Assembly: GCA_022605425.2 (NCBI GenBank)
Contig: JAKIMF020000005.1
Location: forward strand, 620,001-684,000
Source of the DNA: Hamiltosporidium tvaerminnensis FI-OER-3-3
Taxonomy: Eukaryota > Fungi > Microsporidia
DNA length: 64,000 bases
Direction of reading: 5' to 3'
In this document: positions 3,349-57,169 of the stretch, in pieces
Numbering within the stretch: position 1 is the stretch's first letter
Layout of the letters: the number at the start of each line of letters is the position of its first letter
Position numbers and translations under genes: made by a program
The notes under the pieces: generated by a model
Seen by the model: the letters and a program-made list of their open reading frames with translations, nothing else
Database searches by the model: none
What the model was told of the DNA's origin: nothing

Positions 3349-5655
3349 CTAAAACAACCTAGAAAACCTTAGACCAAACTCTTCATGAATCAAAGTTTTA
3401 TACTCCAGAAACTTTTCAATATCGATTTCTGCAACTGATGAAAAAGCCTTAAGAAAATAAATTATATCGATTTTGACACGGAAACTATAAAAATATACTT
3501 TTTTCAGAGACTTAAGTTTTAAAAAAAATAGAAAATCACAATAATTAAATTCTATATCAGGTAGTCTTAATTCTTGTAATGAATATTTAAGTTTACAATC
3601 AAAAATTTCAGAGAATGATATTACTTTAATTTTGCAACTTAGCGAAAAATAAATATGAGTAAGATTTGTGTATTTTTCCAATGCAAGATAATCGTTTTTT
3701 CCTATTTTTATTCCATTAAATATAATTTTTTTAAGATTAACAAAAGGTTGATCATGAAAAATTTTATAGACTGTACCTTCTGGATAGTCGAAACCAAAAT
3801 TAAACTCTGAAAGATTTCTAAAAATTGAAAATTTGGGTAAAGAATCCGTAAAATAATGCTTAACAGAATACTTTAATTGAGTTAAATTGATAAAGCTTGA
3901 ATTCATACAATCTAGCTTTGAGAAAAGAGAATTTTTATCTTTCAAATTACATGAAATTTCCAAATTTTTCAAAGCAATCATTTTAAATATATATTTTAAA
4001 AAATAATCTTTATTTTCAATCAAAGAGACTCGATAGTACAATTTTTCTATTTTTGTGTTTTCACTAAAGGTAATCTCACGATCATTAAATATAATTGAAC
4101 AGTCATGAATAAATAGGCTTTTTAAAGAAGGAAATAATAAAATCTTTGCTAAAAATATATCTGTTATTGTTGATCTAACAAGCCTCATATGTATTATATT
4201 GCTAAATAAATCCGTATCGAGTAAATTGAAATCTTTAATATAGGTATCAGTAAATATTATCGTTATATTTTTTAAATCTTTTAAATTTATAGTATAAAAC
4301 TCAAATGATATCAAAGGATTTGTTAATTCGACATAAATGAAAGCATTAAACGGAAATTCTATTATTTTAAGCTTTTCTATTATGCTTAGTTCTTGGTAAA
4401 ATATGATATTCATTTCAGTGTGCCAATCTATACAAGGCAAGTTTGTATCGCGACCTAAAATCCGTGATTGGTTTTCTTTGTTGTATATCTCGATTTCGAA
4501 TCTCGAAAAGAAGTTCTGAAATAAAGACTCAACTCCTAAATTCATAAAAATCGATATCAACTCATGTTTAGTAGCATCGTAATTTAATATTTTTACTTTA
4601 AGATTTCTTAAAAATGAAATTTCATCTTTAATAGTAAACTTACAATGTATTATTGTCAATATTTTCGGATTGGTTGCAATATCTAAAGTATAAATTTTTT
4701 GTATTAAAAAGTCGGTTTGAAAACATTCAAAAAAAAATATTTCATCAAGATTATTGAATAAACACAAATCAAAGAAGGTATTAAATCTACTTAAATAAGA
4801 TATTTTGTACATAAAAATGCTTCGAAAGTGATGAATAGAAAAAATAATATGAATTATTTTAGAAAAATTATCTATTTTTAAATATTTTTCTAAGATTTCA
4901 TCTATAATATAATTATCAAGGTACAAATAATCTTCATTTAAGTTTATAAAATCAAGATTATAATATTTAGTCAAGGCCATGGCAATAGAAATATCTTTTA
5001 TTTTGTTAAGTGTTTTCTTAGAGAACAGATATAATTTAAATAATTGCACAATAATTCTTTTTGATAAATAACCAGGAAATGAATATATGTTTGCTTTTAA
5101 TAAGCCATTCAATTTACTTGTGGGTTTTATGTTTATCATCAAAGAAACCAATATTAATCGAATAAATTCTTCAAAAGACTTATCGTATTTGAACTTAAAA
5201 ATGTTTATTATTCTTAAAATTTTAAGATACTTACATTCGTCCATAAAATCAATTAAATATGGAAAACACATTACTATATTATAGAAATAGAGAAAATCCT
5301 CATAACTTATTGAACTCTTATTTATATAAATGCTATTCTGATGGCCTTCTATAATTTCTTCTTCATTCAAAAATTTTAAAAGGAAAGTATCTAATTCTAT
5401 TATAAATACTTGGAAATCCTTATTTTTTAAATTATATTTACCCGAAATATAGTTTATATTTGAAAAATATGAACTTGTATTGGAATTTTTATTGTTATTT
5501 ACTTTATTCTCTAATAGACTACCTTCTATATTTTCATAAAAATGTATGGCGATCGTTTTTTGTGCAAATATAATTCTATTGATGTAAAGAATAAAGAATA
5601 TAATACAGTGAATATTATTTTTCGTATAGGTTGCATTCAAAATTATTTCTCTCAT
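3349..5655 (-). CDS. Secreted BTB-like + LRR family protein, subfamily A (768 aa)
   Basis: Long ORF. Hydrophobic N-terminus ending IIFA-QKTIAIHFY; LxxLxL-type repeats in the C-terminal half; clear paralog of 7028, 36664 and 62992. Confidence 0.85.
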   Translation of the reverse strand: MREIILNATYTKNNIHCIIFFILYINRIIFAQKTIAIHFYENIEGSLLENKVNNNKNSNTSSYFSNINYISGKYNLKNKDFQVFIIELDTFLLKFLNEEEIIEGHQNSIYINKSSISYEDFLYFYNIVMCFPYLIDFMDECKYLKILRIINIFKFKYDKSFEEFIRLILVSLMINIKPTSKLNGLLKANIYSFPGYLSKRIIVQLFKLYLFSKKTLNKIKDISIAMALTKYYNLDFINLNEDYLYLDNYIIDEILEKYLKIDNFSKIIHIIFSIHHFRSIFMYKISYLSRFNTFFDLCLFNNLDEIFFFECFQTDFLIQKIYTLDIATNPKILTIIHCKFTIKDEISFLRNLKVKILNYDATKHELISIFMNLGVESLFQNFFSRFEIEIYNKENQSRILGRDTNLPCIDWHTEMNIIFYQELSIIEKLKIIEFPFNAFIYVELTNPLISFEFYTINLKDLKNITIIFTDTYIKDFNLLDTDLFSNIIHMRLVRSTITDIFLAKILLFPSLKSLFIHDCSIIFNDREITFSENTKIEKLYYRVSLIENKDYFLKYIFKMIALKNLEISCNLKDKNSLFSKLDCMNSSFINLTQLKYSVKHYFTDSLPKFSIFRNLSEFNFGFDYPEGTVYKIFHDQPFVNLKKIIFNGIKIGKNDYLALEKYTNLTHIYFSLSCKIKVISFSEIFDCKLKYSLQELRLPDIEFNYCDFLFFLKLKSLKKVYFYSFRVKIDIIYFLKAFSSVAEIDIEKFLEYKTLIHEEFGLRFSRLF

Positions 5656-7027
5656 TAAATCTCGAATTTCACCAATAAAAATTATTAAGTATTAAAAATA
5701 TATATTAAAAGAACCAAATCGAATCAATTAAGAACGAAAGATGTTCTTTTAACCATCTTTATTGAAACACAAACAAAAATATTATATTAAAATTCAAAAA
5801 CAATTTTTTATATATAAGAAGTCTAGAACTAAATAGAAGAAGGAGACTTTTATAGACAATCTCTCATATTTCGTATATATTCAAGGTTTCATCTATAGTT
5901 TTTTGCTGCTATAGACAAAAATTAATTTATAATTTTAATGAAAAAAATATATATTTGATTAATTAAAATCATATAGTGATATTTGGAGGGAATATTTCGA
6001 TCTTGAAATAAGCTAGGCCATATTCATCTTCAATATGTTTTATTTCTTACGATTAATATGTTGTATGATAGCTACATTTTAGTTTACATATTAATATTAG
6101 CCATGAGATATCATTTATAGGTGGTTCGTGATTTAAATTTCGTATACTTCAAAGAGTTTTAAGTTAGGCTCCCTTTTTGTTTTCTATCATGAACTGTTTA
6201 ATGTAATTCAATATTATTTGAATTAATTTAATTATTCTTTCGCCGTGACTGTATTCCTTTTCTGATCAATATTAGATGAATTTGCTTTATATTTAGTGTT
6301 TGAATCTAATATATTTTGCTATACTAGCATATATTTATAAATATATATTATATTTCATAAGCTGGATATGAATACATGTTTGGCTTATTAAACGGGCGAT
6401 AATTTAAACATTCATAAATTTAAATATGTTTAAAACCGGTTATTTTTTGTTCTAGTTAGAACCGAATATATTCGAATTATTTGAAGGTATTATTTGCTCG
6501 TTTTTTGTATTTTATTTCGTTTCTATATATTATAAAAGCTCTGATTGGGCTTAGGATATTTGCATTGTTAGTCAAAATTTTCGCTAATTTCTTAAAACAA
6601 TCATTTTTCCACTTGAAATGTATTTTTAGTTGGAGTTAGAAATCTTTCGGGCATTTTACTCCGTAAATTACACGTTTGAATGTCCCAATATTTATTTAAA
6701 GTTTGTTTGATTGTATTCTCATTTTTGTATAAAGAAATAATTTAAAATCACTTTTTAAGTACTACAGACAAAATAAATATCTCTATTATTTAGGTATATA
6801 ACTTGTCATCCAGTAAATCTTTATATTTCTATTTAACTTATCGTTTAGGTTATAAAATAAAGGATTATTACCTAGATTATACAAATATTAAGGTTTGGGT
6901 TTATGGAATTTTATATCGTCTATCATAAGACTTTTTGATTGTTTGGAAAACTATACCGAAAACACCCTAGAAATTTTTAAACTGTGGAGAAACAGCAAAA
7001 AATATGTTTTAATAAAAAATACCGGTA

Positions 7028-9364
7028 TTAAATCGCGGCTAAACCAAATCCTTCAACAATTTGATTCTTGAACTGAAATACATTTTTTATAGTAATTTTT
7101 ACACCAGAAGAAAAGACTTTGAGTAAAAATATAATATTATTTTTGTTTATAAAGCCATGAACGTATATTTTTTTAAGAAATTTAAGCCTCATAAGAAATT
7201 GTAAATCACAATATGTATATTCCATATTAGGAAATCTTAATTCTTCTAATAAATATGAATTATTTGAATCAAAAAGATTACAGAATGATATTTCTGTAAA
7301 TTTGCAATTTTCATTGAAATACAAAAGAGTAAGATTCCTCAAATCTTTTAGTGCATTTGCATCTTTTATACCTACAGTAATATCGTTAAAGGTTAATGAT
7401 CTAAGATAAACAAAATTTTTTTTAAAAAATATATTATACAGTGTACCTTCAGAACATTCGAAACTGAAATTAAAGTGTAAAAGATTTGGAAAAATAGAAT
7501 AAAATGGTGTGTAATCATTATTATAATATTTAACTGAATATTTTAAATTGGTTACATTGATCATAATTAGATTTTCATCATAAAATTTTGGTTCAAAAAT
7601 ATTTGTAATTTGTGTGTAACAACTTATTTCGAATTCTTTTAAAGCATCCAATTTATAAATAAAATCAAATACGCATTTTTTATTATTTACACGCGATTCG
7701 TTACAACAAAAGCTTTCTATTTTATAATTTCTATCAAACTCAACTTTTTCCTTAGAAAAAATAATTTCAGATTTGGAAATAAATAGTCTTTTTAAAGAAG
7801 GAAACAATAGTACTTTAGACAAAAAAATATCATTTAGTATGGAATTGTATATGCGCATGGTTACTATATTAGTTAAAATTTCTATATTGGTATAAATTTC
7901 TCTATTATTCAAAATTTCTAATTTTTTTAAGTTAAAATCGTTAAGATTCGTATATGAAAACTCTATCGTTATATTTTGAAACTCTTTATAATTCATTAAA
8001 TAAAAAGAAAATTTTATAAATGAATTTGTCACTTCCATATAAACAAATTCCTGAAACGGAAATTTTATATTTATCAACCTTTCTATTTTACTTTTTTCTT
8101 GATGACATTTTAGATCAATTCTTGTGTTTTGGTCATAACACGGACAATCACTATCTCGATAATAAATATTTGATTCGTTTTCTTTATTGTATATTTGTTC
8201 TTTGAATTTATAAAAAATATTACACAATGGTGATTCTGGGCCAAATTTTGAAAATTTAGTTGCTGAATTATATTTTGATACAACATAATAGAATTTTTCG
8301 ACATTTAGTGTTTCAAACCATGAAATTTCATCTTTAATAGTAAATTTCGAATCAATAATACTCAATGTTTTTAAAGGTATGAATTTCCTAAATTCATATA
8401 TTTTTTGGATTAAAATTTCGGTATTTAAACACTCTAATAAAAAAATTTCATCACAATTTTTAAACAGACATAAATCCAATAAACAATTATACTTACAGTT
8501 GTAATTTATCTTAAATAGCAACAAACGTTTAAAGATATGAATCTTAAAAATTGTATTAAATATTTTTTGAAAACTTTTTATATTTTTGTGTATTTTTAAT
8601 ATTTCTTGTAAAATATCATTATAAATATATAGGAAATCCTCTTTTGTGTTTATAATCACAAATTTATACAATTTTATCGATTCTAATATACGAGAAATGT
8701 CTCTTATCTTATTCGATGTTCTATTGTCAATAAAATACAATCTAAAAAATTCTAAAATGACTTTTTTAGAAATAGCATCATTAACTAAATAGACGTTTTT
8801 TGTTTTTGAAAATACGTTCCATTTTTCTAGATCTACTAGATTAAATACAACAGAAGCAAGCATATACCGAATAAAATCTATAAATAACTTATCATTTTTA
8901 AACTTAAAAATATCTATTATTCTAAAAATTTTAAGATATTTGCATTCATTAATATTCTCGATCAAATACGGAAAACTCATTACTATATTATAGAAATATA
9001 CAAAATCATCATAATTTAATAAATTATTATTTATATAAATATTATATTGTTGGTTTTCTGGTATTTCATCTTCATTCAAAAATTTTAATGGAAAAATATT
9101 TATATCTATTATAAATATCTGCGAAATCTTATTCTTAATATCGAAAAGAGAAATATCACGTTTCTCTAATGTGGATTGAGATAAAACTTCGGAATAAATA
9201 TAATTATTTAAGCTGTCTCGCTGTATTTTTGTTTCGACAGATCTATAGAAGTGTATAGCGATTGTTTTCTGCGGAAATATTACTTTGAGAGTAATTAATA
9301 AAACAAATAACAAAGAATTTAGATTCAAATTTCTATTAGTTACGATTTGATTACCTTCTCTCAT
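7028..9364 (-). CDS. Secreted BTB-like + LRR family protein, subfamily A (ATG at 9364 rather than TTG at 9385)
   Basis: Tandem paralog of 3349-5655 (QKTIAIHFY, ECKYLKI, FTIKDEIS, ILLFPSLK/VLLFPSLK, LQELRLP/LEELRFP). First in-frame ATG gives MRE, as in the paralog. Confidence 0.85.
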   Translation of the reverse strand: MREGNQIVTNRNLNLNSLLFVLLITLKVIFPQKTIAIHFYRSVETKIQRDSLNNYIYSEVLSQSTLEKRDISLFDIKNKISQIFIIDINIFPLKFLNEDEIPENQQYNIYINNNLLNYDDFVYFYNIVMSFPYLIENINECKYLKIFRIIDIFKFKNDKLFIDFIRYMLASVVFNLVDLEKWNVFSKTKNVYLVNDAISKKVILEFFRLYFIDNRTSNKIRDISRILESIKLYKFVIINTKEDFLYIYNDILQEILKIHKNIKSFQKIFNTIFKIHIFKRLLLFKINYNCKYNCLLDLCLFKNCDEIFLLECLNTEILIQKIYEFRKFIPLKTLSIIDSKFTIKDEISWFETLNVEKFYYVVSKYNSATKFSKFGPESPLCNIFYKFKEQIYNKENESNIYYRDSDCPCYDQNTRIDLKCHQEKSKIERLINIKFPFQEFVYMEVTNSFIKFSFYLMNYKEFQNITIEFSYTNLNDFNLKKLEILNNREIYTNIEILTNIVTMRIYNSILNDIFLSKVLLFPSLKRLFISKSEIIFSKEKVEFDRNYKIESFCCNESRVNNKKCVFDFIYKLDALKEFEISCYTQITNIFEPKFYDENLIMINVTNLKYSVKYYNNDYTPFYSIFPNLLHFNFSFECSEGTLYNIFFKKNFVYLRSLTFNDITVGIKDANALKDLRNLTLLYFNENCKFTEISFCNLFDSNNSYLLEELRFPNMEYTYCDLQFLMRLKFLKKIYVHGFINKNNIIFLLKVFSSGVKITIKNVFQFKNQIVEGFGLAAI

Positions 9365-13884: not shown

Positions 13885-14766
13885 ATGGAAAATTTTACGT
13901 CAACGGTATTTTGTGTTTCAAAACTTAAGCAGGAGCTTACGCTTCCACATACAAAGACTGTTATATTACATTGTGGTAAACAAGCAATTAAAAGTTTTAA
14001 TGGTGTTCCTGTATTTTTTGTAAGTTTTTATCGAAAAAATTTTATATTTTTTCAGATTTCTCCATACAAAGAAATAAAATCGATTGTTTATTTAGAAGAA
14101 TTTAAAAATTATACATTTTTTAATGATAAAATTTGTGTTTTAAAAGATAATTCTGTAGAACATTTGGATGGAGAAAAGATGTTAGAAGGTGACTTTTCAC
14201 AATTTACTGATATTTATATGATCAATGATAATATTGTATTGAGTGGAAATAAATATTTAAAAATATTTGAAATTTGTAGAAATAATTCTGAAAATGAAAA
14301 AAAAGTATTTTCTGTTGAAAATATGCATTCATATTTTATTAAATGTGACTGTTTTTTTATTGGGTATGCAGTTACTCTTATTGGAAGAAAAAATTTGATT
14401 GATATAAAAAAGGAAAACCAATTATTAGGTACGTTAACTTTTCCGGAAAATATTACTTCAGTAATATCTGATACGCTTGTTACCAAAGTTTATTCTGGTT
14501 CTGAATCAGGAAAAATATATTTTTCTAGTTTGGAAGATAATAATTGTTTGGAACATATTTTATATTTCCATGAATCTTCTATTATTCAATTAAAAATGTC
14601 GTTTTGTGAAAAGTTTTTGTATTCTTTGGATTCAAATGGAAAAATAGCAGTTTGGAATACAGAATATAATAATTTTTTAGGATTTAATAATTTTGAAGCA
14701 GAGAGTATGCTAGTTTGTTGTGAAAATGAGGTAGGTGATTTTCAAAACGAAGATTTTATTAAATAA
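13885..14766 (+). CDS. WD40-repeat protein, probably Ipi3/WDR18-like (Rix1 complex)
   Basis: FPENITSVISDTLVTKVYSGSESGKI and HESSIIQLKMSFCEKFLYSLDSNGKIAVWN resemble the C-terminal WD repeats of Ipi3/WDR18. CCC motif 6-8 nt upstream of ATG. Confidence 0.6.
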   Translation: MENFTSTVFCVSKLKQELTLPHTKTVILHCGKQAIKSFNGVPVFFVSFYRKNFIFFQISPYKEIKSIVYLEEFKNYTFFNDKICVLKDNSVEHLDGEKMLEGDFSQFTDIYMINDNIVLSGNKYLKIFEICRNNSENEKKVFSVENMHSYFIKCDCFFIGYAVTLIGRKNLIDIKKENQLLGTLTFPENITSVISDTLVTKVYSGSESGKIYFSSLEDNNCLEHILYFHESSIIQLKMSFCEKFLYSLDSNGKIAVWNTEYNNFLGFNNFEAESMLVCCENEVGDFQNEDFIK

Positions 14767-16139: not shown

Positions 16140-17819
16140 ATGGATTATCTAGAAATTTCTAATAAAACCAGAGATTTGGAGCACAAATACAATTCCCTTC
16201 TTATAAACAGACTAAATAAGGAAAAGGAAATATTAAAAGATAAAATAACGCATTTGAAATCAAAAAATACAGAAATTACAGATTTACTTTTGCAAACACA
16301 AGAAACACTAAAAATATCGAAAGAAGAAATAAAATCGCTTATGGAAGTAAAAGAGAAGATTTTAAAAAACAATTTAAATCTTGAAAACACAAAAAAAGAA
16401 GAAAATTTACGGTATGTTTTAGGAGGTGAAGAAAATAAAAAAATAATTAAAGAATTACAAAAAGAAATAGAAAATCTAAAAAATGAACAAATTTTAAATA
16501 AAAGAATTAAAGAAGATTTAGATTTATTAAAAATTGAAAATACAAAAATTATTTTAGCCGATTCTAGTTTAAAAGCTAAAAATACTGTTTTAGAAAATGA
16601 AATTTTAAGTTTAAAAAACGAAAAAAATAAATTTTTCAATGAAATTATTTCGTTTAAAGATAAAATAATTAGAATGGAAAGAAATATTGAATTTTATCAA
16701 AATGAAAATAAAGAAAATGAAAGTAAAATTAAAAATTATGAAAAAGATATTTCTGAATTGAGAAATAATAACAAATTTTCTGTTTCCAAAGAAACAATTA
16801 AAAAGTTAGAAATACTTGAAAATGAAAATAATGAATTAAAAACTTTAAAAAATATTTATAAAGAAAAAGATAATTTATTGAATTCCTTAAAAGAGAATTT
16901 AAAACATAAAGAAGAAATTATTTCTTTACAAAGAGAAGTACTAAATAAATATAAAAATACTGATGAATATAAACAGAATGGAGCAACAGTTTCTTTACAA
17001 AGAGAAGTACTAAATAAATATAAAAATACTGATGAATACAAACAAAATGGAGAAACAGTTTCTTTACAAAGAGAAGTACTAAATAAATATAAAAATACTG
17101 ATGAATATAAACAAAATGGAGAAACAGTTTCTTTACAAAGAGAAGTACTAAATAAATATAAAAATACTGATGAATATAAATGTAAAGAAAATATTGAAGA
17201 ATCAAAAGAAGTAGAATCAGAAAGTCTTATATTTTCTCCGTTAAATAAATTTAAAAACCTAGAATCTAATTATTTAGAAAAAAAAGAATTTAAAAAAAGT
17301 ATTTTAAATCCTAAAAAACCAAATTCCAAGAAAAATAAAGATTTAGAAAAAGAAAATAAAAATATTTTTACAGATGAAATTTTACCAAAAAATAAAACCA
17401 TTAATAAATTTAAGGAGGGCGAAAATAAAAAGAACTCAGAAATTAAAAAAAATACTGTCACATTTAAAGAACCAGAAAATAAAAATAAGAAAAGTATTTT
17501 AAATAAAAATAGCCATTTAAAAAAAACGCCCTTAAATTCAAACACTAAATTACCTTCGATTTCGAGTTCCCCTTTTTCATCAAGAAAACCAAAAAAATCT
17601 GTGATTTTCCATCCAATTAAAAAAACTTCAAAAGCACGTTTATTAACTCAAAAAGAAGAAATCGAATCTGATTTTATTGTAAATTCTAAAGAAAACAACA
17701 CCAAACAAAGTAATGAAAATGTAAGTTTATCTCAACCTATAAAATTAGAAAATTCTTCTTTCTTTGCAAACCTTACTTTCACAGATTCAAGTCCTGTCAT
17801 TAAAAAACACAGATTTTAA
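16140..17819 (+). CDS. Coiled-coil protein with internal 23-aa repeats and basic, SP/TP-containing C-terminal tail
   Basis: 559-aa ORF with heptad-rich K/E/L N-terminal ~270 aa; CCC just upstream of ATG. Confidence 0.85.
   Translation: MDYLEISNKTRDLEHKYNSLLINRLNKEKEILKDKITHLKSKNTEITDLLLQTQETLKISKEEIKSLMEVKEKILKNNLNLENTKKEENLRYVLGGEENKKIIKELQKEIENLKNEQILNKRIKEDLDLLKIENTKIILADSSLKAKNTVLENEILSLKNEKNKFFNEIISFKDKIIRMERNIEFYQNENKENESKIKNYEKDISELRNNNKFSVSKETIKKLEILENENNELKTLKNIYKEKDNLLNSLKENLKHKEEIISLQREVLNKYKNTDEYKQNGATVSLQREVLNKYKNTDEYKQNGETVSLQREVLNKYKNTDEYKQNGETVSLQREVLNKYKNTDEYKCKENIEESKEVESESLIFSPLNKFKNLESNYLEKKEFKKSILNPKKPNSKKNKDLEKENKNIFTDEILPKNKTINKFKEGENKKNSEIKKNTVTFKEPENKNKKSILNKNSHLKKTPLNSNTKLPSISSSPFSSRKPKKSVIFHPIKKTSKARLLTQKEEIESDFIVNSKENNTKQSNENVSLSQPIKLENSSFFANLTFTDSSPVIKKHRF
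16921..17180 (+). repeat. Coding tandem repeat, 69-bp unit x ~3.8
   Basis: tttctttacaaagagaagtactaaataaatataaaaatactgatgaat starts at 16921, 16990, 17059 and 17128. Confidence 0.95.
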
Positions 17820-18223: not shown

Positions 18224-20794
18224 TTAAATAATTGAAAAGAAACCAAAAATACAATCATAACCACTTTCATTAGTAAATATATAATTATACTCTCTTGAAA
18301 TAAAATTTCCTAAAAATAAAATTCTATTAAAATAAGAATAGCAAGGAACTCCATTTTTGAGGGTTTCTTTAGGTTGAAATGTAATTTCATGTTCTTTTAA
18401 ATCGTCAAAATTTTTTAAAATTATACTTAAATAATTTCTAGAAAGTATTTTTTTAAATTTATTATCTTGAATTAACTCTTGAATAGTTTTTCTTGATAAA
18501 ATAATTGGTGTATCAATATTTCCTAAAAAAAGTAAATTTTTATTTTTATATTTGTATTGCAAATCATTTAAAAATAAATAAAAAAGATTTTTTTTATCAA
18601 AATCTAATTTGTTGAGTTTGAAATCACAATTAATGATTACAAAGGTTTTGTTTTGAAATATAAATGTACTTGTAATCAATGTGTTGCTAGTTGATGCTTC
18701 AAATTTTATTTTTTCTTTTTTATTTGAAATACTTGATATTTCATCTATTTTGTCGTTTTTTATAAAAACCAAAGTAGCCAATTCGTAGGAAAAGTTTTGA
18801 AAAGCTAAAATAAAATTATTTTCTAAAAATTTTGATTCTAAAAAATTTTTCCATTTCAATCTTTCAATACTTTTATCTTTAAAAAACATTTTACTGACAT
18901 TAAAGTACATCTTTTGTAAACAAATTATAATTATATTTGTATTTTCTGGTATATTCAAATCAAAAGAATATGATGATTTGTAAGGAATATGATTAAGATT
19001 ACAACAAAGTACTAAAAAATTATTACCGCACTTTTCTAAAGACATATTCTCAAATTTATTTTTAATATCTAAAACTGTAAAATCTTTTTCCAATTTAAAA
19101 TTTTCTTCTTCTAAAATTAAATTTGTTTCCAATATAGTTGGACTTTCATTTTTTTCAGTTTTAAATTCTTCAGAAAAAATTGTAGGTTCTTCATTATTTT
19201 TTTCTAAAAGTAAATTTATTAATTCATATTTCATTTTATCTGAAAATCCACTGTTTATAATACGAGAAGCTGAAATTATAAAATCATCTATGATTCCAAC
19301 AAATGACCGCTTTTCTTTTAAAGCAAGTTCACTTCTCATGGCATCAGAACCAGAATAAAAATAACTTAAGATGTGTCCATTTTCTACCCAAATCGTTTTT
19401 AAATTTAATTTTACATTTTCAATAATTTTATAATTTAAATCGTATTTTTCTAAAATTTGGTAAAAAAAATATTCACAAATTAAATATTGTGCAAGATTTG
19501 TTCTGTCCAAACAATCTACACACGAAACACGAAAAATAACATTTTTATCTTCAATTCTTACAAGTTTTTCCATAAATATTTTCTTCAATAATCTGAAATT
19601 ACCTGTATAATTATTTATGTCAAAAGAAGTAAATGGAATATTTTGATTCAAAAGACACTCTTCGTACATTCCAGATAATTTTGTTTCTCCTCTTTTTTTC
19701 CCCAAAAGATTCCACACATGTATTTTTCCATATTTAGTTTTCAAATGATCAAAATGTCTTTTAAATGCATTTTTGCTAATTTCACTTTCTCTTGAAAATT
19801 TAAATTCAAATTTTAAAGGATTTTTTTCTTGGTACCAAAATAAAGGAATTGAACCTCTGATTAATGTAATTTCAAAAATAATATTTTCTTTCAAATAAAT
19901 TCTACACAATGTTTTTACAAAGAAAGAAACATTTCCATTGTCATCTAATCCTCTACAATACAACCTAGGACCTACTTTTGCACTTGAAATAAGAGAAAGT
20001 AATTGTATTTCAAATTTATCAGAATAAATGTGACGTTCTTCTTTGAAAGTTTCATTTTCTTGTATCAAAATATTTTCTTCAAATAAATTTAAAGTTTTTA
20101 ATGAATCTTTAGAATTAATTTGAATTTCTTTAGAATTAAAATTTAATTCTTTTTCTTTCTTGTATTCTTTTAAAGGAACATATTTTATATTGAAAAATCC
20201 ACATACCATAATTCCTATTCCTAAATCATTATAATCTCCTGATTTGGCATTTGAACTTTCGAAAAATAATTGAATTTCTAAATTTTCTTCAGAAATTTTT
20301 AAAAATCTTTTTTTCATTATCGAATTCCAAATAAACTTTTCATTTTCTAAAAAATCACTAACAAAGGTATTTTTTTCTAAATCTGAATTCTTCATAAAAT
20401 AAAAATTGTGTGTTTGAACAAAGCCAGCCATTCTAAGATTTTCATTCGATAAATCTTCATCACTAAAATTTTCATTTTTTTCTTTTCTTCCTAATTTTTT
20501 TAATGCATAAAATTTTATTTTATTTATTTTATAAATATTTATTTCATTAAATTTTCCAACAAAATTACATCTTGAAACATAACTAAAATACCAATTGGTT
20601 TCTTCATTTTTTTTAATCTCTAAAATACCGATAGCACAACAAAAATCATCAATTAATGTATCGCTATAATCGGTTTCAAAACAATTTTTATTACTAGTTT
20701 CAGTATCCTGTTTTCCCTGTATGAACACGTAACCATTAGATGTTTTATATGATATTCTTTTGGTTTGCTGTGATATTTCTATTTTACCATCCAT
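18224..20794 (-). CDS. Synaptojanin/INP5x-type polyphosphoinositide phosphatase (Sac1 domain + degenerate 5-phosphatase domain)
   Basis: Sac1 motifs GPRLYCRGLDDNGNVSFFV, IRGSIPLFWYQ, FRVSCVDCLDRTNLAQ (CX5R) and NGHILSYFYSGSDA; C-terminal ~265 aa follow 5-phosphatase motif order. Confidence 0.9.
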   Translation of the reverse strand: MDGKIEISQQTKRISYKTSNGYVFIQGKQDTETSNKNCFETDYSDTLIDDFCCAIGILEIKKNEETNWYFSYVSRCNFVGKFNEINIYKINKIKFYALKKLGRKEKNENFSDEDLSNENLRMAGFVQTHNFYFMKNSDLEKNTFVSDFLENEKFIWNSIMKKRFLKISEENLEIQLFFESSNAKSGDYNDLGIGIMVCGFFNIKYVPLKEYKKEKELNFNSKEIQINSKDSLKTLNLFEENILIQENETFKEERHIYSDKFEIQLLSLISSAKVGPRLYCRGLDDNGNVSFFVKTLCRIYLKENIIFEITLIRGSIPLFWYQEKNPLKFEFKFSRESEISKNAFKRHFDHLKTKYGKIHVWNLLGKKRGETKLSGMYEECLLNQNIPFTSFDINNYTGNFRLLKKIFMEKLVRIEDKNVIFRVSCVDCLDRTNLAQYLICEYFFYQILEKYDLNYKIIENVKLNLKTIWVENGHILSYFYSGSDAMRSELALKEKRSFVGIIDDFIISASRIINSGFSDKMKYELINLLLEKNNEEPTIFSEEFKTEKNESPTILETNLILEEENFKLEKDFTVLDIKNKFENMSLEKCGNNFLVLCCNLNHIPYKSSYSFDLNIPENTNIIIICLQKMYFNVSKMFFKDKSIERLKWKNFLESKFLENNFILAFQNFSYELATLVFIKNDKIDEISSISNKKEKIKFEASTSNTLITSTFIFQNKTFVIINCDFKLNKLDFDKKNLFYLFLNDLQYKYKNKNLLFLGNIDTPIILSRKTIQELIQDNKFKKILSRNYLSIILKNFDDLKEHEITFQPKETLKNGVPCYSYFNRILFLGNFISREYNYIFTNESGYDCIFGFFSII

Positions 20795-26834: not shown

Positions 26835-29036
26835 ATGAAATCATTTGTATTCATTAAAAATTTTTTGTTCTTATATTTCTTTTTTGTTAGAGAAATATCC
26901 ACATCTGATATTCAAATATCATTTTTACTGGAAAAAGAGGTCAAATCAACTTTCAAAAAAATTTTCAAACAATCTGATAATCAGAAAATATATGGAAAAT
27001 TCGATTTATATGGCAAATTACTTTCTATAAATCATAAAAAGATTCTTTCAACCGAAATTTATAATGAAGATGAATTTATAATTTGCGAATTAAAAAAGGT
27101 TACTTTGAATTATCCAACTGATTTTTCGGTTAAATTTGAATACCTAGACATTTTATTATTGAAAAAATACAAAACTTCAAATGAAATTTATATCGGCAAC
27201 ATGGTTTCATATAAAAACTTTAAACTGTTTATGAAAATTTGTTCAGATACCGAAAATAATCTTAAAAAGCGAATAAATATTGGAGATATTTTTCAAATAT
27301 TACATTTAATCGATTTTTTGAATCCGATTGACAAATATTTCGAGAAAAAAATAGTTAAGAAAATTTATGAAATTAAATTTAAAAGATATACACTTTATTC
27401 GGATTTCTTTGATTATTATAAGAAACTTATAATATATCAAAGGTATATACACGAGTTTATATATTTTATACGAAATATAATCACCGGAAAAAATTTAGAT
27501 ATTTTAATCAACAAAGATTTTCTGGTCATCGATAACAATTATATGAATTTAATAGATGACTCTTTCAAAAAACAAGCTGTATTTTCCGAGTCTGTTGAAT
27601 TCGTTGTCACCAAAAATGTAATTCTTAAGATTAGTATGTTTGATAAGAAAGATAGAGATACGCTAATTAATTCCATAGTTCATACTATTATTCTTTGTCA
27701 TATAAAGAAAATATCTATCTTAACAGACTGTCCCTTTGACAGAATAACACATATATTCGAAAGAAAATCTCTTCTTTCAATCAAAAATAGTTTTAGAACT
27801 TCATATAGCTGCCCAGATATATTTAAAATATTTATTTTAATTGAAAAATATGGTTATAGTGATGAAATAACTCACATAAGATTAGAGAAAATAAATATTT
27901 CTAAAAAAACATGTAATTGCATTTCCAAATTTAGAAAGATTAAATCGCTAGAAATTAGTTTTTGTAAAAAAAATTCAGAATTATTTCTGAAAAAAACTCT
28001 TGAAACTTCAAAAGAGTTAGAAATTTTAAAACTCAATGATATGTATATCTCACGAAATACTTTAAAACTAATATCGAAGATGAATCTTAGTAAAATTAGT
28101 TTTAAGTCTTGCAGATTTGAAAAATCACAAGAAATTTTTTTTACTTTAAATATTCCATTATGTATAAGAAAATTAAATTTTTGCAGAAATACAATCGAAT
28201 ATTCTTTTTTCATTTATTTGGAAGCAATAAAAAACCTCGAATCTTTAAATATTTCTTTTGCGGTTATAATGTCTCCATTACCCACCAAAATTAATCTAGG
28301 CAATTTAAAAAAGATAAATCTAACTGGAATCAAGAGTTTTTATTTAGGAAATGTTTTGATGTACAAAATGAATAATTTAAGAAAAATAATTATTTCAGAA
28401 ATATTTTTCTTTCATTTTTTAACTAAACCGGTAGATATGAACAATGTATTTTACAAAATAAAAGAAATAAAAATACCTTTTTCACTTTCTATACTAAGAT
28501 ATGTAAACACATTGAAAGAATTTAATTGTTTGGAAAAATTAACTATGGAAAATACTTTTTTTAAACAAAACGATTTTCTTAAATTAGATGGAGTTTTATT
28601 TATCCATACTCTGCAGTATTTAAAAATATCAGCTGCAACTTTTGGCAACAATGATATTTTAATATTGAAAAAATTCAATAACCTTCAGTTTTTAGGCTTG
28701 ATAAAATGTAGTTTGGATAAAGTAGAATCTAATCTATTTAATATAGATTTATGGAAAAAAACCATAATGAGTTTAGATCTTAGATTTACAAAAATAAACG
28801 ACGAGGACATAAATAATATACTTCAATTCGAAAATCTTAAATACCTTTCATTAACTATATTCTCTCGGCAAAGACAAAATTTTATTGTACAAATTTTGAG
28901 ATTTTCCAAAACATTGAATTTGCAAGAATTAATTCTTTTTAATAGTTATTTAACAGATCAAGAAATACTTAGTTTGATTCAAAGTAAAGTATCTAAACGA
29001 ACTTTCTTTATTGAAAATGAATATATTATAGCCTAA
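26835..29036 (+). CDS. Secreted BTB-like + LRR family protein, subfamily B (733 aa)
   Basis: Signal-like FLFLYFFFVREIST; LRRs IKSLEISFC, LEILKLNDM, LESLNISF, LQFLGLIKC, IMSLDLRFT. Confidence 0.85.
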   Translation: MKSFVFIKNFLFLYFFFVREISTSDIQISFLLEKEVKSTFKKIFKQSDNQKIYGKFDLYGKLLSINHKKILSTEIYNEDEFIICELKKVTLNYPTDFSVKFEYLDILLLKKYKTSNEIYIGNMVSYKNFKLFMKICSDTENNLKKRINIGDIFQILHLIDFLNPIDKYFEKKIVKKIYEIKFKRYTLYSDFFDYYKKLIIYQRYIHEFIYFIRNIITGKNLDILINKDFLVIDNNYMNLIDDSFKKQAVFSESVEFVVTKNVILKISMFDKKDRDTLINSIVHTIILCHIKKISILTDCPFDRITHIFERKSLLSIKNSFRTSYSCPDIFKIFILIEKYGYSDEITHIRLEKINISKKTCNCISKFRKIKSLEISFCKKNSELFLKKTLETSKELEILKLNDMYISRNTLKLISKMNLSKISFKSCRFEKSQEIFFTLNIPLCIRKLNFCRNTIEYSFFIYLEAIKNLESLNISFAVIMSPLPTKINLGNLKKINLTGIKSFYLGNVLMYKMNNLRKIIISEIFFFHFLTKPVDMNNVFYKIKEIKIPFSLSILRYVNTLKEFNCLEKLTMENTFFKQNDFLKLDGVLFIHTLQYLKISAATFGNNDILILKKFNNLQFLGLIKCSLDKVESNLFNIDLWKKTIMSLDLRFTKINDEDINNILQFENLKYLSLTIFSRQRQNFIVQILRFSKTLNLQELILFNSYLTDQEILSLIQSKVSKRTFFIENEYIIA

Positions 29037-36663: not shown

Positions 36664-39024
36664 ATGATGTGTGAAGCAATCTTAAAGTCAATTAATATAA
36701 AAACAAATTTCACATTTTGGGCTTTATATATTCTTTCAATATCTAAAGTAATATTAACACAAAAGACAATCGCTTTACATTTTTATGAAGCAGAAGAAAT
36801 CCAATTAACAAAGAATGGAACGAAGAATTGCGATTATTTTGATGAGAGTTTCCATTTTGACGATCAAAAACCCATTCTTTATAGTTTGGATTCAAATAGT
36901 AAAGTTTTACAAGTATTTATAATTAATTTGGAAACTTTCTTCTTGAATTTTTCTAATGACGAGGAAATACAAGAAAACCAGCAACATAACATGCATATAA
37001 ATATAAATCTAGTGAGTTATAAGGAATTTTTATATTTTTATAATATAGTAATGTGTTTTCCATTTTTAATTGGAAATGTGAACGAAAACAGATATCAGCT
37101 TATGCTTAAAATTTGTGATATTCTTAAGATTAAAACCAATAAGCGTTTTGAAGAATTTATTCGTTTGTTGCTAGTTTCTCTGATATTTAATCCAGAAGTA
37201 ACAAACAAATGGAAATTCACATCTACTTCAAAAAATTATCAATCTTCTAGTATTGTATCTAAAAATATTATTGTAGAATATTTTAAAATGCATTTTATTC
37301 CAGAAAAAACACAAAAAAAGATAAAAGATATTTCCCGTGCTTTATATTTAACTGATGGTTTTTCCTTTGATTTTATAAAGTTGACCAATGATTTTCTCTA
37401 TCTCGATGACGAAATTATAAATGAAGTTTTAGAAAAAGTTAAAAAATCAAATGATAATCTAAAAATATTTGATTTTATATTTTGCATTCATAAATTTAAT
37501 TGCATATTTTTGAGTGGGATATCTTATGCCGATGAATATTATCAGTTATTTAATTTGTCGCTATTTAAAAATCTTAATGAAATATTTATAAATCGATGTC
37601 AAAATGCAGATGTATTAATTCAAAAAATTTATAATTCATGTGGTTCGAGATGTATTAAAACCTTAAATATTATTCGCTCGGATTTTACAATGAAATATGA
37701 AATTCCATGGTTAAGAAAGCTTGACTTTAAGGCTGTAAATTATATTGTTGAAAATGATGGCCATATAGCCATTTTCTACAACTCAGATGCCAGTCCACTG
37801 GTTCAAAATATTTTTTCAAGATTTATAGATGAAATATACGAAGAAAACAAATCAAACATTTTTGTGCGCACAGGTGAATTATCTTGTTATGATCAAGATA
37901 AAAAGTTTTTCGTTCAGTTTTATCAAGAAAGAAGTAAATTAGAAAATTTTACAAACACAAAATCCCCAATTTAAACATATATCTACACTGAATTAATCAA
38001 TGATTTTTTATCATTCAATTTCTACATTATTAATTTTTCTGAATTAAAGAATATAAAGATTCATCTTTCAAATACCTGTATTAAGGATTTCAACATATGT
38101 GAATCCGAAATACTAAACAATATAACTAAAATGACCATTGTCGATTCTACATTTGATGCTATTTTTTTGTCGAAAATTCTAATGCTGGTTTCTTTGAAAT
38201 ATGTTGTTTTTATGAAATGTATAGTTACATTCCATAAAAACGAAGTCGTTTTTAATGTAAACAAAAAAATTGAAAAGCTTTATCTCGGAAATTCTTCGGT
38301 GGATGACCAGTATCATTATGTTAAATTTATAAATCATATTCTCAATTTGAAAATCCTAGATATTAATATTTATAGTAGTTCTAGAAATTCAAATATTTTT
38401 TCAATAAAGACAGATACTATTAATATAAAATTATTCCATCTGAGGTCATTGAAATATTCTGCTACTTCTTTTTCTGATTATGCAGAGCCGATTTTCCCAA
38501 AACTTCCATATATTTTACAGATTGAACTTGGATCTAACTTTCCTAAAGGTACACTTCATAGGATATTTTATCAGAATTATTTTGGTAGTCTAAAAAGATT
38601 AAATTTTGATGGGGCTCACCTAGGAAAAGAAGATGAATTTGCATTCGGAAACTATATAAATCTTCTTTCATTGTGTTTCTCTGGATATTCTAAATGCTCG
38701 GAAATAAAATTTTCGGAACTTTTCAATTTAAATAAAATATATTCATTGCAGGAATTAAAACTTCCTGATATTGAAATTACTTGTTTGGATTTGCAATTTC
38801 TTTCAAAACTAAATTGCTTGAAAAGGATTTATATTTATAGTTTAGCGTCACAAGCCCATATTATAAATTTCTTTAAATTGTTATTGTTTGTCCAAGAAAT
38901 TGAAATTAAAAAATTAACGGTTTACGGGAATGAAATATATGAACAATTTGGTACAAAACCTGTAAAATTGATGTGGATGAATAATTATGCGAATCTAAAA
39001 TATTTGAGCAGATGTGTTGAATAA
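36664..39024 (+). pseudogene. Subfamily A BTB-like + LRR gene interrupted by one in-frame TAA (37972-37974)
   Basis: The two track ORFs are in the same frame. The intervening 52 codons are open and homologous: KSPI*TYIYTELINDFLSFNFY vs paralog KFPFQEFVYMEVTNSFIKFSFY. Confidence 0.85.
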
Positions 39025-45284: not shown

Positions 45285-45695
45285 ATGAAAAAAACCGTAG
45301 CAGAGAAAAGACCAGCAACAAAAGCACCAGCAAAATCAGTTTCTCACGATTCTCAAGGAGCAGCTGAACCTAAGAAAAAGAAGAGAGGACACAAGACAGA
45401 TTATCATGGTGTAATCTTTAGAAGTTCTGTAAAAAGAATATCTAAAGTTTTATATGCTGAACCACCACAGATTAGTTCAAGTGCACTCGAATGTTTTTCA
45501 TGTATTGCATTGGATATTGTTGAAAGTATCAGTGACTGTGCCGCTGGATTAGCTAAAAAAGTCAACAAACAAACAGTCGGTGCTGATGATATCATAGCTG
45601 CCTTTGATATTTGTTATCGAGGTGAATTGGCACAACAGACTCTCGTCGAAGTTAAGGAATTAGTAGCTAAAAGTCAAATGAAAGTTGCTAAGTAA
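45285..45695 (+). CDS. H2B: Divergent histone H2B
   Basis: K/A/P-rich tail, KKKKR, ISSSA (ISSKA), DIVESISDCAAGLAKKVNKQTV ([22 protein letters not shown]), GELA. Confidence 0.85.
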   Translation: MKKTVAEKRPATKAPAKSVSHDSQGAAEPKKKKRGHKTDYHGVIFRSSVKRISKVLYAEPPQISSSALECFSCIALDIVESISDCAAGLAKKVNKQTVGADDIIAAFDICYRGELAQQTLVEVKELVAKSQMKVAK

Positions 45696-54682: not shown

Positions 54683-57169
54683 TTAATGACTAACAATTGA
54701 AAATGAATAATTGTCAAACATTTCTTTTAAAATCTCTTTGGTATGAACATCCAGATTATAATGTCTTAAACCCATTTCAAGCCTAAACTCAGGATTAAAA
54801 AAATCATATTTCACAAATTTTTCTCGGCCTACGGGCAGAAATGTATAGCATTCAATTTTTACTTCCGATAAATTTGAAAAACCAGCTAATCTTACAAGAT
54901 CATCAAAACAAATATTTCCTTCTGTTTCTACACTTAAAATATTCAAATTTTTTTTCATAGCAGCTAAACCTAAAATATTAAAATAGCAAAATAGAAAACA
55001 ATCGGTTGCAACCTTAAAATGTAAATATTTAAGTTTTTTACAATATCGGATCCTTTCAAAATCAGAAAAATACATATCAACACCCGAAAGATCTAACGAA
55101 ACCAACGAAGCAATCAACTGATCATTAAGAACATTTATCCATATTCCCTTCTCTATTTTAGATTTTGAAATACTAAGAGATTCTAAAACAGTGAATTTAG
55201 AAATAAAATCATAATTTTTCGAAGTTATATTATTTCTTGAAATATCCAAAGCCCTTAATGTATCAAACATCCGCAGATTTGGTAAATCATCCGTGTTTAA
55301 AGGAAGACTAGCAGAAAGATTAAGATACTTTAGATTCCGAAAATTATGTATTAAAGTCAGATTATCAACAGTTAGCGAATTGTCACTTAGATCGAGCGTT
55401 TTTACGGAACTATTAAAATAGCCTGTATTAAAAAAGAATAGTATATCACTAAAAACCCTTGACTCACATAAACTCAAAAAAGACACAGAATAGCCTCTAA
55501 GAAAACTCTTTAGATAATCAGTTGGAATATATTTATCCACCTGTAAATAATTCCATTTTCCTTGAAAAGCTACAACAGAAAGAGAAGAATTCGCTGGTAG
55601 AAATTCAAAGTTGCTTATATTTAACTTTTCGAGATTCATAGAGCGCAACAACAACTCTATCAGATCCACAGGAAGTCTAGACGACAAAACACTCAATGTT
55701 CTTAAATGTTCCATTATTTTATACTTAAAAATATGATTTTTTTCGAGTGACCAGACTGAATCATTACATATTGTACATGTATCTAAAACCAAAACCCTGA
55801 TTTTGGAACAAAGAATTATATTCGCATCATCTGATCTCATTTCCATATCACTTAGTTTGAAAATATTGAGATCAGGCATTTTTACTAAGAATTTTGTAAT
55901 TTTCTGGCATTCAACAGACAAACAATATGCCGCCTCCAAAAAAGACACTTTATTTTTCTCAAAAATGGTTTGAAACGTAGCAAAGCAAATATCAATATTT
56001 ACGAATCTTAAATATGTTATTCGTTGTTGATTTGCTTCGCTTAGATTTAAGAAAAATTCCGAGGGTACTGATTTTAACAAATTCGAAGACCTTATTGGTA
56101 CTTCGGCTCTAATAAAACCACACACATTTTGACATTTTATTGGGTTATAAGTATATTCAGTATCATCAAAATAGAAACCTTCGATTTTTGTAACAGTCAA
56201 CAACCAATTAAAAATTTGCATTTTATCATCAAATGCGGACATGAGCAATTCCAATGAGTAAGCAGATATTTTTAAAACAAGTCTCTCTATATTTTTTGCA
56301 TATCTAAAACACCGATCTATGTATTGACTCTTTTTTTGAAATAGTGAAAGAGTGGAAATATTTGGAATTAAACATGCGTCTAATGAATCGTTTAGGACAC
56401 TAAAAAAACTTAAAAACGATGTTTGCAGCCCTTTTTCGCTAAATAATCTGGTTTTATAGTCATAGAAGTCATTCAAAATATCGGCAGAACTAATAGAGTT
56501 TATTAATCCATTTTTATATAAAGCCAAATAAAATTTATCAAGATTCTCACAGCTAATTGGATCTAAAAGATCTAAAACTTTAATAAGCTTATAAAAAAGT
56601 TCATATGATAAATTTTCAGATAAAACAATCGAATCGTTTGATATATATCCAGCAAAAACGCCTAATAATTGATATGAAACATCAAACGAGCCATAAAATA
56701 GAAATGGTTTACCTGAATTTTTCGATAAATAGTCATTTAAGACACGAAATTTTACTTTCCAATCATCTTTATAATTCACCCTATATATATGCAACGGTTC
56801 ATGATTAAGAAAAGAACGGTTATGTGGGCAAACAAAAAATGCCGGATATATCCTATTCGCAGTAAATTGGTGCTTTCCAGAACAAAAGCTAAATCTATCA
56901 TTTTCATTCGAACGAGACAACCAATATTCTACCTTAGCAATTATTTCTCTTCCAATACTTTTCCTCCAGTTAATGTCTATTAATGCAAACTCTATTATAC
57001 CATTATTAGATTGGCATGCGCAATTTATTTCTTTCAAAAAACTTAAGCTATATAAAAATGCAAATAAAGCCCAATATCTCATTATCCACCTTTGAATTTT
57101 CAAACACAAATATTCTATATTTTTTGCAAAAAAGATGCTAAAAAATTGTAGGCTGATTAAAGAATACAT
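54683..57169 (-). CDS. Secreted BTB-like + LRR family protein, subfamily C (start may be Met30 at 57082)
   Basis: MRYWALFAFLYSLSFLKEINC is signal-like; canonical LRRs VKTLDLSDNSL, LKYLNLS, LRALDISRNNI, LESLSISKSKI, LVSLDLSGV. Confidence 0.88.
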   Translation of the reverse strand: MYSLISLQFFSIFFAKNIEYLCLKIQRWIMRYWALFAFLYSLSFLKEINCACQSNNGIIEFALIDINWRKSIGREIIAKVEYWLSRSNENDRFSFCSGKHQFTANRIYPAFFVCPHNRSFLNHEPLHIYRVNYKDDWKVKFRVLNDYLSKNSGKPFLFYGSFDVSYQLLGVFAGYISNDSIVLSENLSYELFYKLIKVLDLLDPISCENLDKFYLALYKNGLINSISSADILNDFYDYKTRLFSEKGLQTSFLSFFSVLNDSLDACLIPNISTLSLFQKKSQYIDRCFRYAKNIERLVLKISAYSLELLMSAFDDKMQIFNWLLTVTKIEGFYFDDTEYTYNPIKCQNVCGFIRAEVPIRSSNLLKSVPSEFFLNLSEANQQRITYLRFVNIDICFATFQTIFEKNKVSFLEAAYCLSVECQKITKFLVKMPDLNIFKLSDMEMRSDDANIILCSKIRVLVLDTCTICNDSVWSLEKNHIFKYKIMEHLRTLSVLSSRLPVDLIELLLRSMNLEKLNISNFEFLPANSSLSVVAFQGKWNYLQVDKYIPTDYLKSFLRGYSVSFLSLCESRVFSDILFFFNTGYFNSSVKTLDLSDNSLTVDNLTLIHNFRNLKYLNLSASLPLNTDDLPNLRMFDTLRALDISRNNITSKNYDFISKFTVLESLSISKSKIEKGIWINVLNDQLIASLVSLDLSGVDMYFSDFERIRYCKKLKYLHFKVATDCFLFCYFNILGLAAMKKNLNILSVETEGNICFDDLVRLAGFSNLSEVKIECYTFLPVGREKFVKYDFFNPEFRLEMGLRHYNLDVHTKEILKEMFDNYSFSIVSH

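What the first reader, a model, noticed from the sequence alone, without database searches (positions are those of the whole stretch)
3349..9364. Expanded secreted 'signal peptide - BTB/Skp1-like - LRR' family: candidate host cullin-ligase hijacking system
Seen: six paralogs in 64 kb (3349, 7028, 26835, 36664, 54683, 62992) in three divergent subfamilies. The five with visible N-termini have a hydrophobic leader, and all have C-terminal LRRs. Between these lies a shared ~100-aa block: a beta-strand right after the leader (KTIAIHF / SDIQISF / GIIEFAL), then LKFL or VKF..L, then IYI...[IV]SY..F..F, then a helix pair KILRIINIFKF / QILHLIDFLNP / KLIKVLDLLDP. This follows the BTB/Skp1 pattern S.YF..L, I.L..V....F..LL.Y, ELL.AADFL. 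Known: BTB domains recruit Cullin-3, Skp1 recruits Cullin-1, and LRRs act as substrate receptors. Inference: a fast-evolving exported effector family that redirects host ubiquitin ligases, likely annotated only as hypothetical or LRR proteins.
Basis: partly seen in the sequence, partly recalled or inferred. Interest (0 to 1): 0.85.

Follow-up and report, generated by a model that had tools for sequence, protein, structure and literature searches.

The report
Secreted BTB-LRR family of a microsporidian
A parasite that lives inside water-flea cells carries about 170 copies of an unannotated gene for exported proteins shaped like the adaptors that tell a cell which proteins to destroy, so it may steer its host's protein disposal, but binding to that machinery has not been shown.

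Summary
The window comes from the microsporidian Hamiltosporidium tvaerminnensis, a parasite of Daphnia. All six paralogs are real. One is broken by a stop; one runs off the window but is whole in the genome.

The hidden N-terminal block is a degenerate BTB/Skp1-fold core. In a structure search with an AlphaFold model, 48 of the top 50 hits are BTB, Skp1, Elongin C or T1 domains (Z up to about 7), although Pfam sees nothing. It follows a cleavable-looking signal peptide and precedes a long LRR solenoid.

The block marks at least ~168 loci on 16 of 17 contigs, about 96 in full-length frames. It was found only in Hamiltosporidium. It is the most constrained part of the protein (dN/dS 0.27) and is swapped between paralogs as a module.

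Cullin binding is untested. The POZ dimer arm and Skp1's PxPN motif are absent, the Cul3 phi-x-D/E motif is patchy, and no positive selection was seen. Best reading: an exported single-chain cullin adaptor (about 50%). The closest precedent is chlamydial PEX1 BTB-LRR effectors. I found no report of this in microsporidia. Other first readers of this scan flagged the same family elsewhere in this genome.

The parts
3349..5655 (-). Subfamily A member, 768 aa, intact: signal peptide - BTB-fold core - helical linker - LRR solenoid
5563..5655 (-). Predicted signal peptide of the 3349 gene (aa 1-31; basic n-region, hydrophobic core, Ala at -1)
   Evidence: heuristic, SignalP not available
5113..5562 (-). 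BTB/Skp1-fold domain of the 3349 gene: strand B1, a disordered ~40-aa insert, B2, a shortened A1/A2 region carrying I-I-E (phi-x-E candidate), B3, helices A3-A5
   Evidence: AF2 domain model, core pLDDT about 90; VIA Z up to 7.0-7.4 against BTB and Skp1; HMM core hit; motif count
3352..4929 (-). LRR-type solenoid of the 3349 gene (about aa 243-768; aa 378-768 align to LRR proteins at Z 13-17)
7028..9364 (-). Subfamily A member, 778 aa from the ATG at 9364, intact; 45% identical to its tandem neighbour; core block at 8816-9133
26835..29036 (+). Subfamily B member, 733 aa, intact; core block at 27087-27368
36664..39024 (+). Subfamily A member, broken: one in-frame stop at 37972-37974 separates the leader/BTB/first-LRR part (36664-37974) from the remaining LRRs (ORF 38131-39024); core block at 36901-37215. 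Left as it is.
54683..57169 (-). Subfamily C member, 828 aa, intact; core block at 56492-56794; Cys/His motif C-x-G-x-H...C...H in the B1-B2 insert
62992..64000 (-). 3' (LRR) part of an intact 776-aa subfamily A gene whose leader and BTB block lie beyond the window end (locus L004)

Best explanation
A Hamiltosporidium-specific, birth-and-death family of exported single-chain cullin-ligase adaptors. Step 1 (inferred from sequence): a signal peptide sends the protein through the parasite's secretory pathway into the Daphnia cell. Step 2 (fold predicted, binding inferred): the N-terminal BTB/Skp1-type core, which lacks the homodimer arm, docks on the N-terminal repeat of a host cullin, with CUL3 or CUL1 not resolved. 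Step 3 (fold predicted, role inferred): the ~500-aa LRR solenoid, which differs strongly between paralogs, captures a host protein and presents it for ubiquitylation. One chain would thus replace Skp1 plus an F-box/LRR receptor, or a BTB-Kelch adaptor. Different paralogs would give different substrates.
For: Fold: 48 of the top 50 VIA rows are BTB, Skp1, Elongin C or T1 chains, aligned over 76-117 residues from B1 to A5; Z 7.1-7.4 for ZBTB8A, Skp1 and KEAP1. Atlas structure matches TM 0.42-0.50 to BTB proteins. Language-model neighbours of two subfamilies are BTB clusters. The only PDB sequence hit of the core profile is a BTB domain (E 1.4). Export: leader in 35 of 39; small residue at the -1 column in 32 of 36 against 19% background. 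LRR families of other microsporidia are secreted into host cells (PMC3976299). Adaptor logic: the core is the most conserved domain among paralogs (36% vs 21-32% identity in A; 49% vs 34-37% in C) and has the lowest pooled dN/dS (0.27 vs 0.34-0.40). Tandem paralogs L009/L011 are 78-95% identical over aa 41-200 but 25-45% elsewhere. phi-x-D/E lies in the loop before B3 in 11 of 13 genomic A1 members, including four of the six window genes. Precedent: BTB-LRR effectors of Protochlamydia (PMC4209131) and poxvirus A55 (10.1101/461806). Host SCF ligases act against microsporidia (PMC4063957).
Against: No binding, localisation or expression data; the RNA read test could not be run. Z of about 7 is in the range the tool calls middling, rmsd is 2.8-3.9 A, Foldseek E is at best 1.4, and Pfam finds no BTB. 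Helices A1/A2, part of the cullin-binding face, are largely missing in the subfamily A model. No member has Skp1's Cul1-binding PxPN. phi-x-D/E is absent from all 10 A2-type members and from 15 of 18 B-E members, and the loop is acid-rich, so matches arise easily. Cores of different subfamilies share only 9-20% identity, which is odd for domains binding one conserved cullin. BTB folds also serve oligomerisation (PMC1257465). No positive selection was seen on the LRRs at domain level.
Confidence: 0.5

Rival explanations
1. Exported LRR binding proteins whose BTB core is only an oligomerisation or scaffolding module (as T1/KCTD domains are), or has lost its partner. They bind and sequester host proteins without ubiquitylating them.
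For: Core-only BTB folds form tetramers and pentamers (PMC1257465); KCTD and Kv T1 domains are among the hits. Cullin-binding motifs are missing or patchy. Sequestration is the published idea for microsporidian LRR proteins (PMC3749934).
Against: T1/KCTD hits rank below BTB-ZF, KLHL and Skp1 (Z 4.3-5.6 vs 6-7.4). BTB plus a repeat domain in intracellular parasites is associated with ligase adaptors (PMC4209131, 10.1101/461806).
Confidence: 0.25
2. Decoys or inhibitors: they bind host cullins or Skp1 partners but block or titrate host ligases, protecting the parasite from ubiquitin-based defence.
For: Host SCF components restrict N. parisii, which appears to suppress or evade ubiquitylation (PMC4063957). 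A55 may also act by sequestering Cul3 (10.1101/461806). The copy number is high.
Against: A decoy would not need about 100 diverse LRR solenoids kept under purifying selection.
Confidence: 0.12
3. They work on the parasite side: in the secretory lumen, at the parasite surface or spore wall, or (if the leader is not a signal) as adaptors for the parasite's own cullins.
For: The genome has two Skp1/Elongin-like genes and two cullin-like genes. Signal peptides were judged by heuristics only. Some leaders are 30-55 aa long.
Against: A conserved cleavage-site pattern directly before strand B1 separates the proteins from the parasite's cytosolic cullins. There is no conserved downstream transmembrane segment. 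Zinc-type Cys/His motifs and basic NLS-like runs in the insert fit a cytosolic or nuclear destination.
Confidence: 0.09
4. The BTB resemblance is an artefact: a generic small alpha/beta cap on the LRR that happens to score against BTB.
For: Middling Z, no significant Foldseek or Pfam hit; only one subfamily was modelled.
Against: 48 of the top 50 rows among 48,161 chains belong to one fold. Four kinds of search agree, two of them (language-model features and the sequence profile) independent of the model.
Confidence: 0.04

Closest known systems
Protochlamydia PEX1 family (Domman et al. 2014, PMC4209131)
   Same: N-terminal BTB plus C-terminal LRRs; 73 members; birth-and-death evolution with pseudogenes; purifying selection; obligate intracellular parasite; proposed host ubiquitin-ligase effectors.
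   Different: Bacterial, exported by type III secretion, BTB detectable by Pfam. Here a eukaryotic parasite with Sec-type signal peptides, a cryptic core-only BTB and about 170 loci. No sequence link was detected.
Poxvirus BTB-Kelch adaptors (vaccinia A55; 10.1101/461806) and giant-virus BTB-WD40 proteins
   Same: Pathogen protein with a BTB domain joined to a repeat domain; A55 BTB is a structural hit (Z 6.2) and binds host Cul3.
   Different: A55 is long-form, dimeric, with 3-box, BACK and Kelch. These proteins lack the dimer arm, carry LRRs and have a signal peptide.
Secreted LRR families of microsporidia (Spraguea lophii PMC3749934; Antonospora locustae PMC3976299; Reinke et al. PMC5423893)
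   Same: Lineage-specific expanded LRR family with signal peptides, no transmembrane anchor, many broken copies.
   Different: No BTB/Skp1 module was seen in the passages of those papers I read, and no sequence link to them was found. Whether they hide one is untested.
Skp1 plus F-box/LRR receptors (SCF-Skp2, FBXL2) and Elc1-Rad7
   Same: Skp1/EloC-fold next to an LRR solenoid; Skp1 is among the top hits for the core (Z 7.1-7.2); FBXL2 and Rad7 are among the top hits for the LRRs (ties among many LRR proteins).
   Different: Two separate chains in the host, one chain here; no PxPN motif; no F-box was recognised in the linker.

Membership tests
BTB/POZ fold (Stogios 2005, PMC1257465) | Three-strand sheet B1-B3 with helices A3-A5 in BTB order; structural match over most of the core | tested here: met
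   76-117 aligned residues, Z up to 7.4, 48 of 50 top rows
BTB/POZ fold (Stogios 2005, PMC1257465) | Helices A1 and A2 between B2 and B3 | tested here: inconclusive
   largely absent in the subfamily A model; an A2-like amphipathic stretch is kept by sequence in subfamilies B-E, which were not modelled
Pfam BTB / Skp1_POZ families | Score above the family cut-off | tested here: not met
   the Skp1_POZ scan hits only two small separate genes
Long-form CUL3 adaptors (KLHL, SPOP, A55) | N-terminal beta1/alpha1 extension for homodimerisation | tested here: not met
   B1 follows the predicted cleavage site directly; aligned chain ranges start at the core
Long-form CUL3 adaptors (KLHL, SPOP, A55) | phi-x-D/E motif in the alpha3-beta4 loop (10.1101/461806) | tested here: inconclusive
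   11 of 13 A1, 0 of 10 A2-type, 3 of 18 B-E; register from the ZBTB18 alignment plus remembered KEAP1 spacing; acid-rich loop
Long-form CUL3 adaptors (KLHL, SPOP, A55) | 3-box helices after A5 | tested here: inconclusive
   helices follow A5 in the full model, but confidence is low in the domain model and no specific match was obtained
Cullin-RING ligase adaptors (any) | Binds a cullin and directs substrate ubiquitylation | not testable with these tools
   no complex prediction or binding assay available
Skp1 | PxPN motif in B3 (Cul1 contact; PMC1257465) | tested here: not met
   none in 50 cores
Elongin C | Core fold lacking helix A5 | tested here: not met
   A5 is present; lower Z of 4.8-5.6
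Microsporidian large host-exposed gene families (Reinke 2017) | At least 10 members in one genome, enriched in signal peptides, lineage-specific | tested here: met
Microsporidian large host-exposed gene families (Reinke 2017) | Protein found inside host cells | not testable with these tools
Chlamydial PEX1 | N-terminal BTB plus C-terminal LRR architecture | tested here: met
   PMC4209131
Chlamydial PEX1 | Sequence homology to PEX1 and a type III secretion signal | tested here: not met
   only 32 hits among 1.84 billion representatives; those identified are Hamiltosporidium; Sec-type leader instead

The most novel reading that the evidence does not exclude
Hamiltosporidium devotes about 100 intact genes (roughly 3% of its 3,573) to secreted single-chain mimics of a whole Skp1-F-box-LRR or BTB adaptor module that plug into Daphnia cullins and retarget host protein degradation, swapping the cullin-docking module between LRR specificities by gene conversion. 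The 'orphan' secreted LRR families of other microsporidia might hide the same cryptic BTB.
Probability: 0.4. Interest if true: 0.85.

Novelty: new variant of a known kind. Interest (0 to 1): 0.7.

Why it matters
Expanded secreted LRR families are a long-noted but unexplained feature of microsporidia. A cryptic BTB/Skp1 core gives this one a specific, cheap test: cullin binding. The two Hamiltosporidium genome papers I checked do not mention the family; one reports only an MCM expansion (PMC6944219; PMC10542269). If the adaptor reading holds, a fungus-related parasite has converged on the strategy of chlamydiae and poxviruses at larger scale. It would also supply about 100 candidate genes for host specificity in the Daphnia-Hamiltosporidium coevolution model. 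Even if cullin binding fails, it defines a large unannotated family by its fold.

Tried and rejected
- Pfam, HMM and phmmer searches for BTB gave nothing above threshold. The only BTB sequence hit was E 1.4.
- Fold searches with the full-length model returned only LRRs; the domain had to be modelled alone.
- Relatives outside Hamiltosporidium were not found. Many true paralogs score below the library threshold, so distant microsporidian kin are not excluded. Pattern scans of genome and viral contigs could not run with the diverse alignment.
- Positive selection was not seen at domain level. Site-level tests were not run.
- Expression was not tested. I do not take the contig for human.
- Assembly artefact for the L009/L011 shared module is unlikely, since tandem pairs of both clusters occur in several independent assemblies. 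The chimeric P0020 could still be one.
- The broken 36664 gene was not read through.
Full report
Source. The window is 25% GC and gene-sparse. Its proteins match Hamiltosporidium tvaerminnensis and H. magnivora. The assembly (21,638,905 bases, 17 contigs) has the size and contig count of the published H. tvaerminnensis genome, with 3,573 genes (PMC10542269). This microsporidian grows inside Daphnia magna cells (own knowledge).

Observation. 3349 (768 aa) and 7028 (778 aa from the ATG at 9364) are tandem paralogs at 45% identity. 26835 and 54683 belong to other subfamilies (17-22% identity). 36664 is broken by one in-frame stop at 37972-37974 and was left so. 62992 is the 3' end of an intact 776-aa gene that extends past the window. 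The shared block aligns across subfamilies and passes a leave-one-family-out test against shuffles: 27 of 32 one way and 9 of 18 the other.

Family size. A 106-position profile of the block hits 130 places in the genome. A second profile adds 38 more by my hand count, giving at least about 168 loci on 16 of 17 contigs. About 96 lie in open frames of 730 aa or more and about 72 in short or broken frames. An LRR profile finds LRRs about 1.6 kb downstream of many of the newly found blocks, and further ~800-aa LRR frames that the block profiles missed (150 of 308 candidates scored). The count is therefore a lower bound. The tree of cores shows at least five subfamilies. Among 1.84 billion representative proteins only 32 match, and those identified are Hamiltosporidium, named hypothetical, uncharacterised or LRR protein.

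Anatomy. (1) Leader: a hydrophobic stretch in 35 of 39 intact members and 0 of 8 control ORFs. At the aligned column just before strand B1 or its short lead-in, the -1 residue is small in 32 of 36, against a 19% background. This is a signal-peptidase pattern, judged without SignalP. (2) N-terminal domain: the full-length AlphaFold model (pLDDT 81.8) and the domain model (core about 90) give strand, disordered insert, strand, short loop, strand, then three helices. Against 48,161 PDB representatives, 48 of the top 50 rows are BTB-ZF, KLHL, Skp1, KCTD, Elongin C, Kv T1 or poxvirus A55 domains (Z 4.3-7.0, 76-117 residues aligned, B1 to A5). Realignment gives Z 7.1-7.4 for ZBTB8A, Skp1 and KEAP1. 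Atlas and viral searches lean the same way, weakly. Two searches independent of the model agree: language-model neighbours for subfamilies A and B are BTB clusters, and the profile's only PDB hit is the ZBTB18 BTB, in the expected register (E 1.4). Each score alone is middling; their agreement is the evidence. The core is degenerate: helices A1/A2 are mostly lost in subfamily A. (3) A helical linker of about 100 aa with no assigned family. (4) An LRR solenoid, Z 13-17 to many LRR proteins. The B1-B2 insert carries subfamily-specific Cys/His motifs (C-x2-H-x2-C-x2-C in six genomic A2-type members; C-x-G-x-H...C...H in all ten C members) and basic NLS-like runs in subfamily D. These hint at a reducing cytosolic or nuclear destination, which is inference.

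Evolution. The core is the most conserved long domain among paralogs and has the lowest pooled dN/dS, 0.27 against 0.31-0.47 for the other parts (six pairs, simple counting method). Nothing exceeds 1 in the pooled values. Orthologs in other isolates and in H. magnivora are 90-100% identical per 80-aa block. The tandem pair L009/L011 shares 78-95% identity over aa 41-200 but 25-45% elsewhere, so the BTB module was copied onto a different LRR body. An H. magnivora protein switches from one parent to the other inside the core, which may be a crossover or a misassembly.

Mechanism. Shown by computation: signal-like leader, BTB-fold core, LRR solenoid, expansion with many pseudogenes, and constraint on the core. 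Inferred: export, cullin binding and substrate capture. The long-form dimer arm is absent and no core has Skp1's Cul1-binding PxPN (PMC1257465). The Cul3-binding phi-x-D/E motif (10.1101/461806; 10.1101/2023.02.15.528651) has a candidate in 11 of 13 A1 members, including the 3349, 7028, 36664 and 62992 genes. It is absent from A2-type members and complete in only 3 of 18 B-E members; its register rests partly on my memory of the KEAP1 sequence. So the proteins are not members of the KLHL/SPOP, Skp1 or Elongin C families, but they may work like them. I put an exported cullin adaptor at 0.5, a scaffold or oligomer role at 0.25, a ligase decoy at 0.12, a parasite-side role at 0.09, and artefact at 0.04. 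The parasite has its own Skp1/Elongin-like and cullin-like genes, a possible origin of the domain, which I did not test.

Known relatives and novelty. BTB-LRR effector families are described in Protochlamydia (PEX1, 73 members, purifying selection, many pseudogenes; PMC4209131). BTB-Kelch cullin adaptors are described in poxviruses. Secreted LRR families are described in Spraguea, Antonospora and other microsporidia, without a BTB module in the passages I read. Paper searches found no report of BTB-LRR proteins in microsporidia, in a library that lacks most subscription journals. Haag et al. saw only an MCM expansion in this genus. Verdict: a new variant of a known kind. Several other first readers of this scan flagged the same family on other pieces of this genome; these notes are unchecked and are not independent support.

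Limits. Only subfamily A was modelled. Locus counts are by hand from two capped lists.

Noticed in passing
window 46214-49975 (-), with 3' fragments at 60472-60771 and 53482-53838: Intact 1253-aa non-LTR retrotransposon ORF (RVT_1, E 4e-27); its 3' end recurs at 94% identity 14.3 kb away.
   Followed up: partly
protein P0032: A family member closely matching L014 runs, after about 150 aa, into sequence matching the start of the window's retrotransposon ORF: an apparent insertion of this element into a family gene in another assembly.
   Followed up: no
L009 and L011 (G000:C14 about 839-848 kb); protein P0020: Tandem paralogs share only the BTB module at high identity; an H. magnivora protein is a chimera of the two with the switch inside the core.
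   Followed up: partly
L020-L029, L034-L048, B1-B2 insert: Subfamily-specific Cys/His clusters that look like zinc sites, and basic NLS-like runs in subfamily D.
   Followed up: partly
G000:C10:16641-17780, C17:907754-908893, C2:30882-32021: Three near-identical 1180-aa LRR frames, two of them within about 32 kb of a contig start, that lack a hit to the BTB-block profiles: a separate LRR family.
   Followed up: no
G000:C4:576699, C1:1869529, C13:479977, C15:1157311: The parasite's own Skp1/Elongin-like genes (106- and 97-aa frames) and two cullin-like genes (793- and 1118-aa frames).
   Followed up: no
window 18224-20794 (-): Synaptojanin-like gene with Sac1 and 5-phosphatase-type domains.
   Followed up: no
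window 45285-45695 (+); 13885-14766 (+): Histone-fold protein of 136 aa, and a WD40-like protein of 293 aa.
   Followed up: no
window 50248-52632 (+); 29538-30224 (-); 16140-17819 (+): Orphans without Pfam hits: a 794-aa protein in very AT-rich DNA that by eye recalls a decayed helicase, a 228-aa protein that by eye recalls a sliding-clamp subunit, and a coiled-coil protein with a short internal repeat.
   Followed up: no
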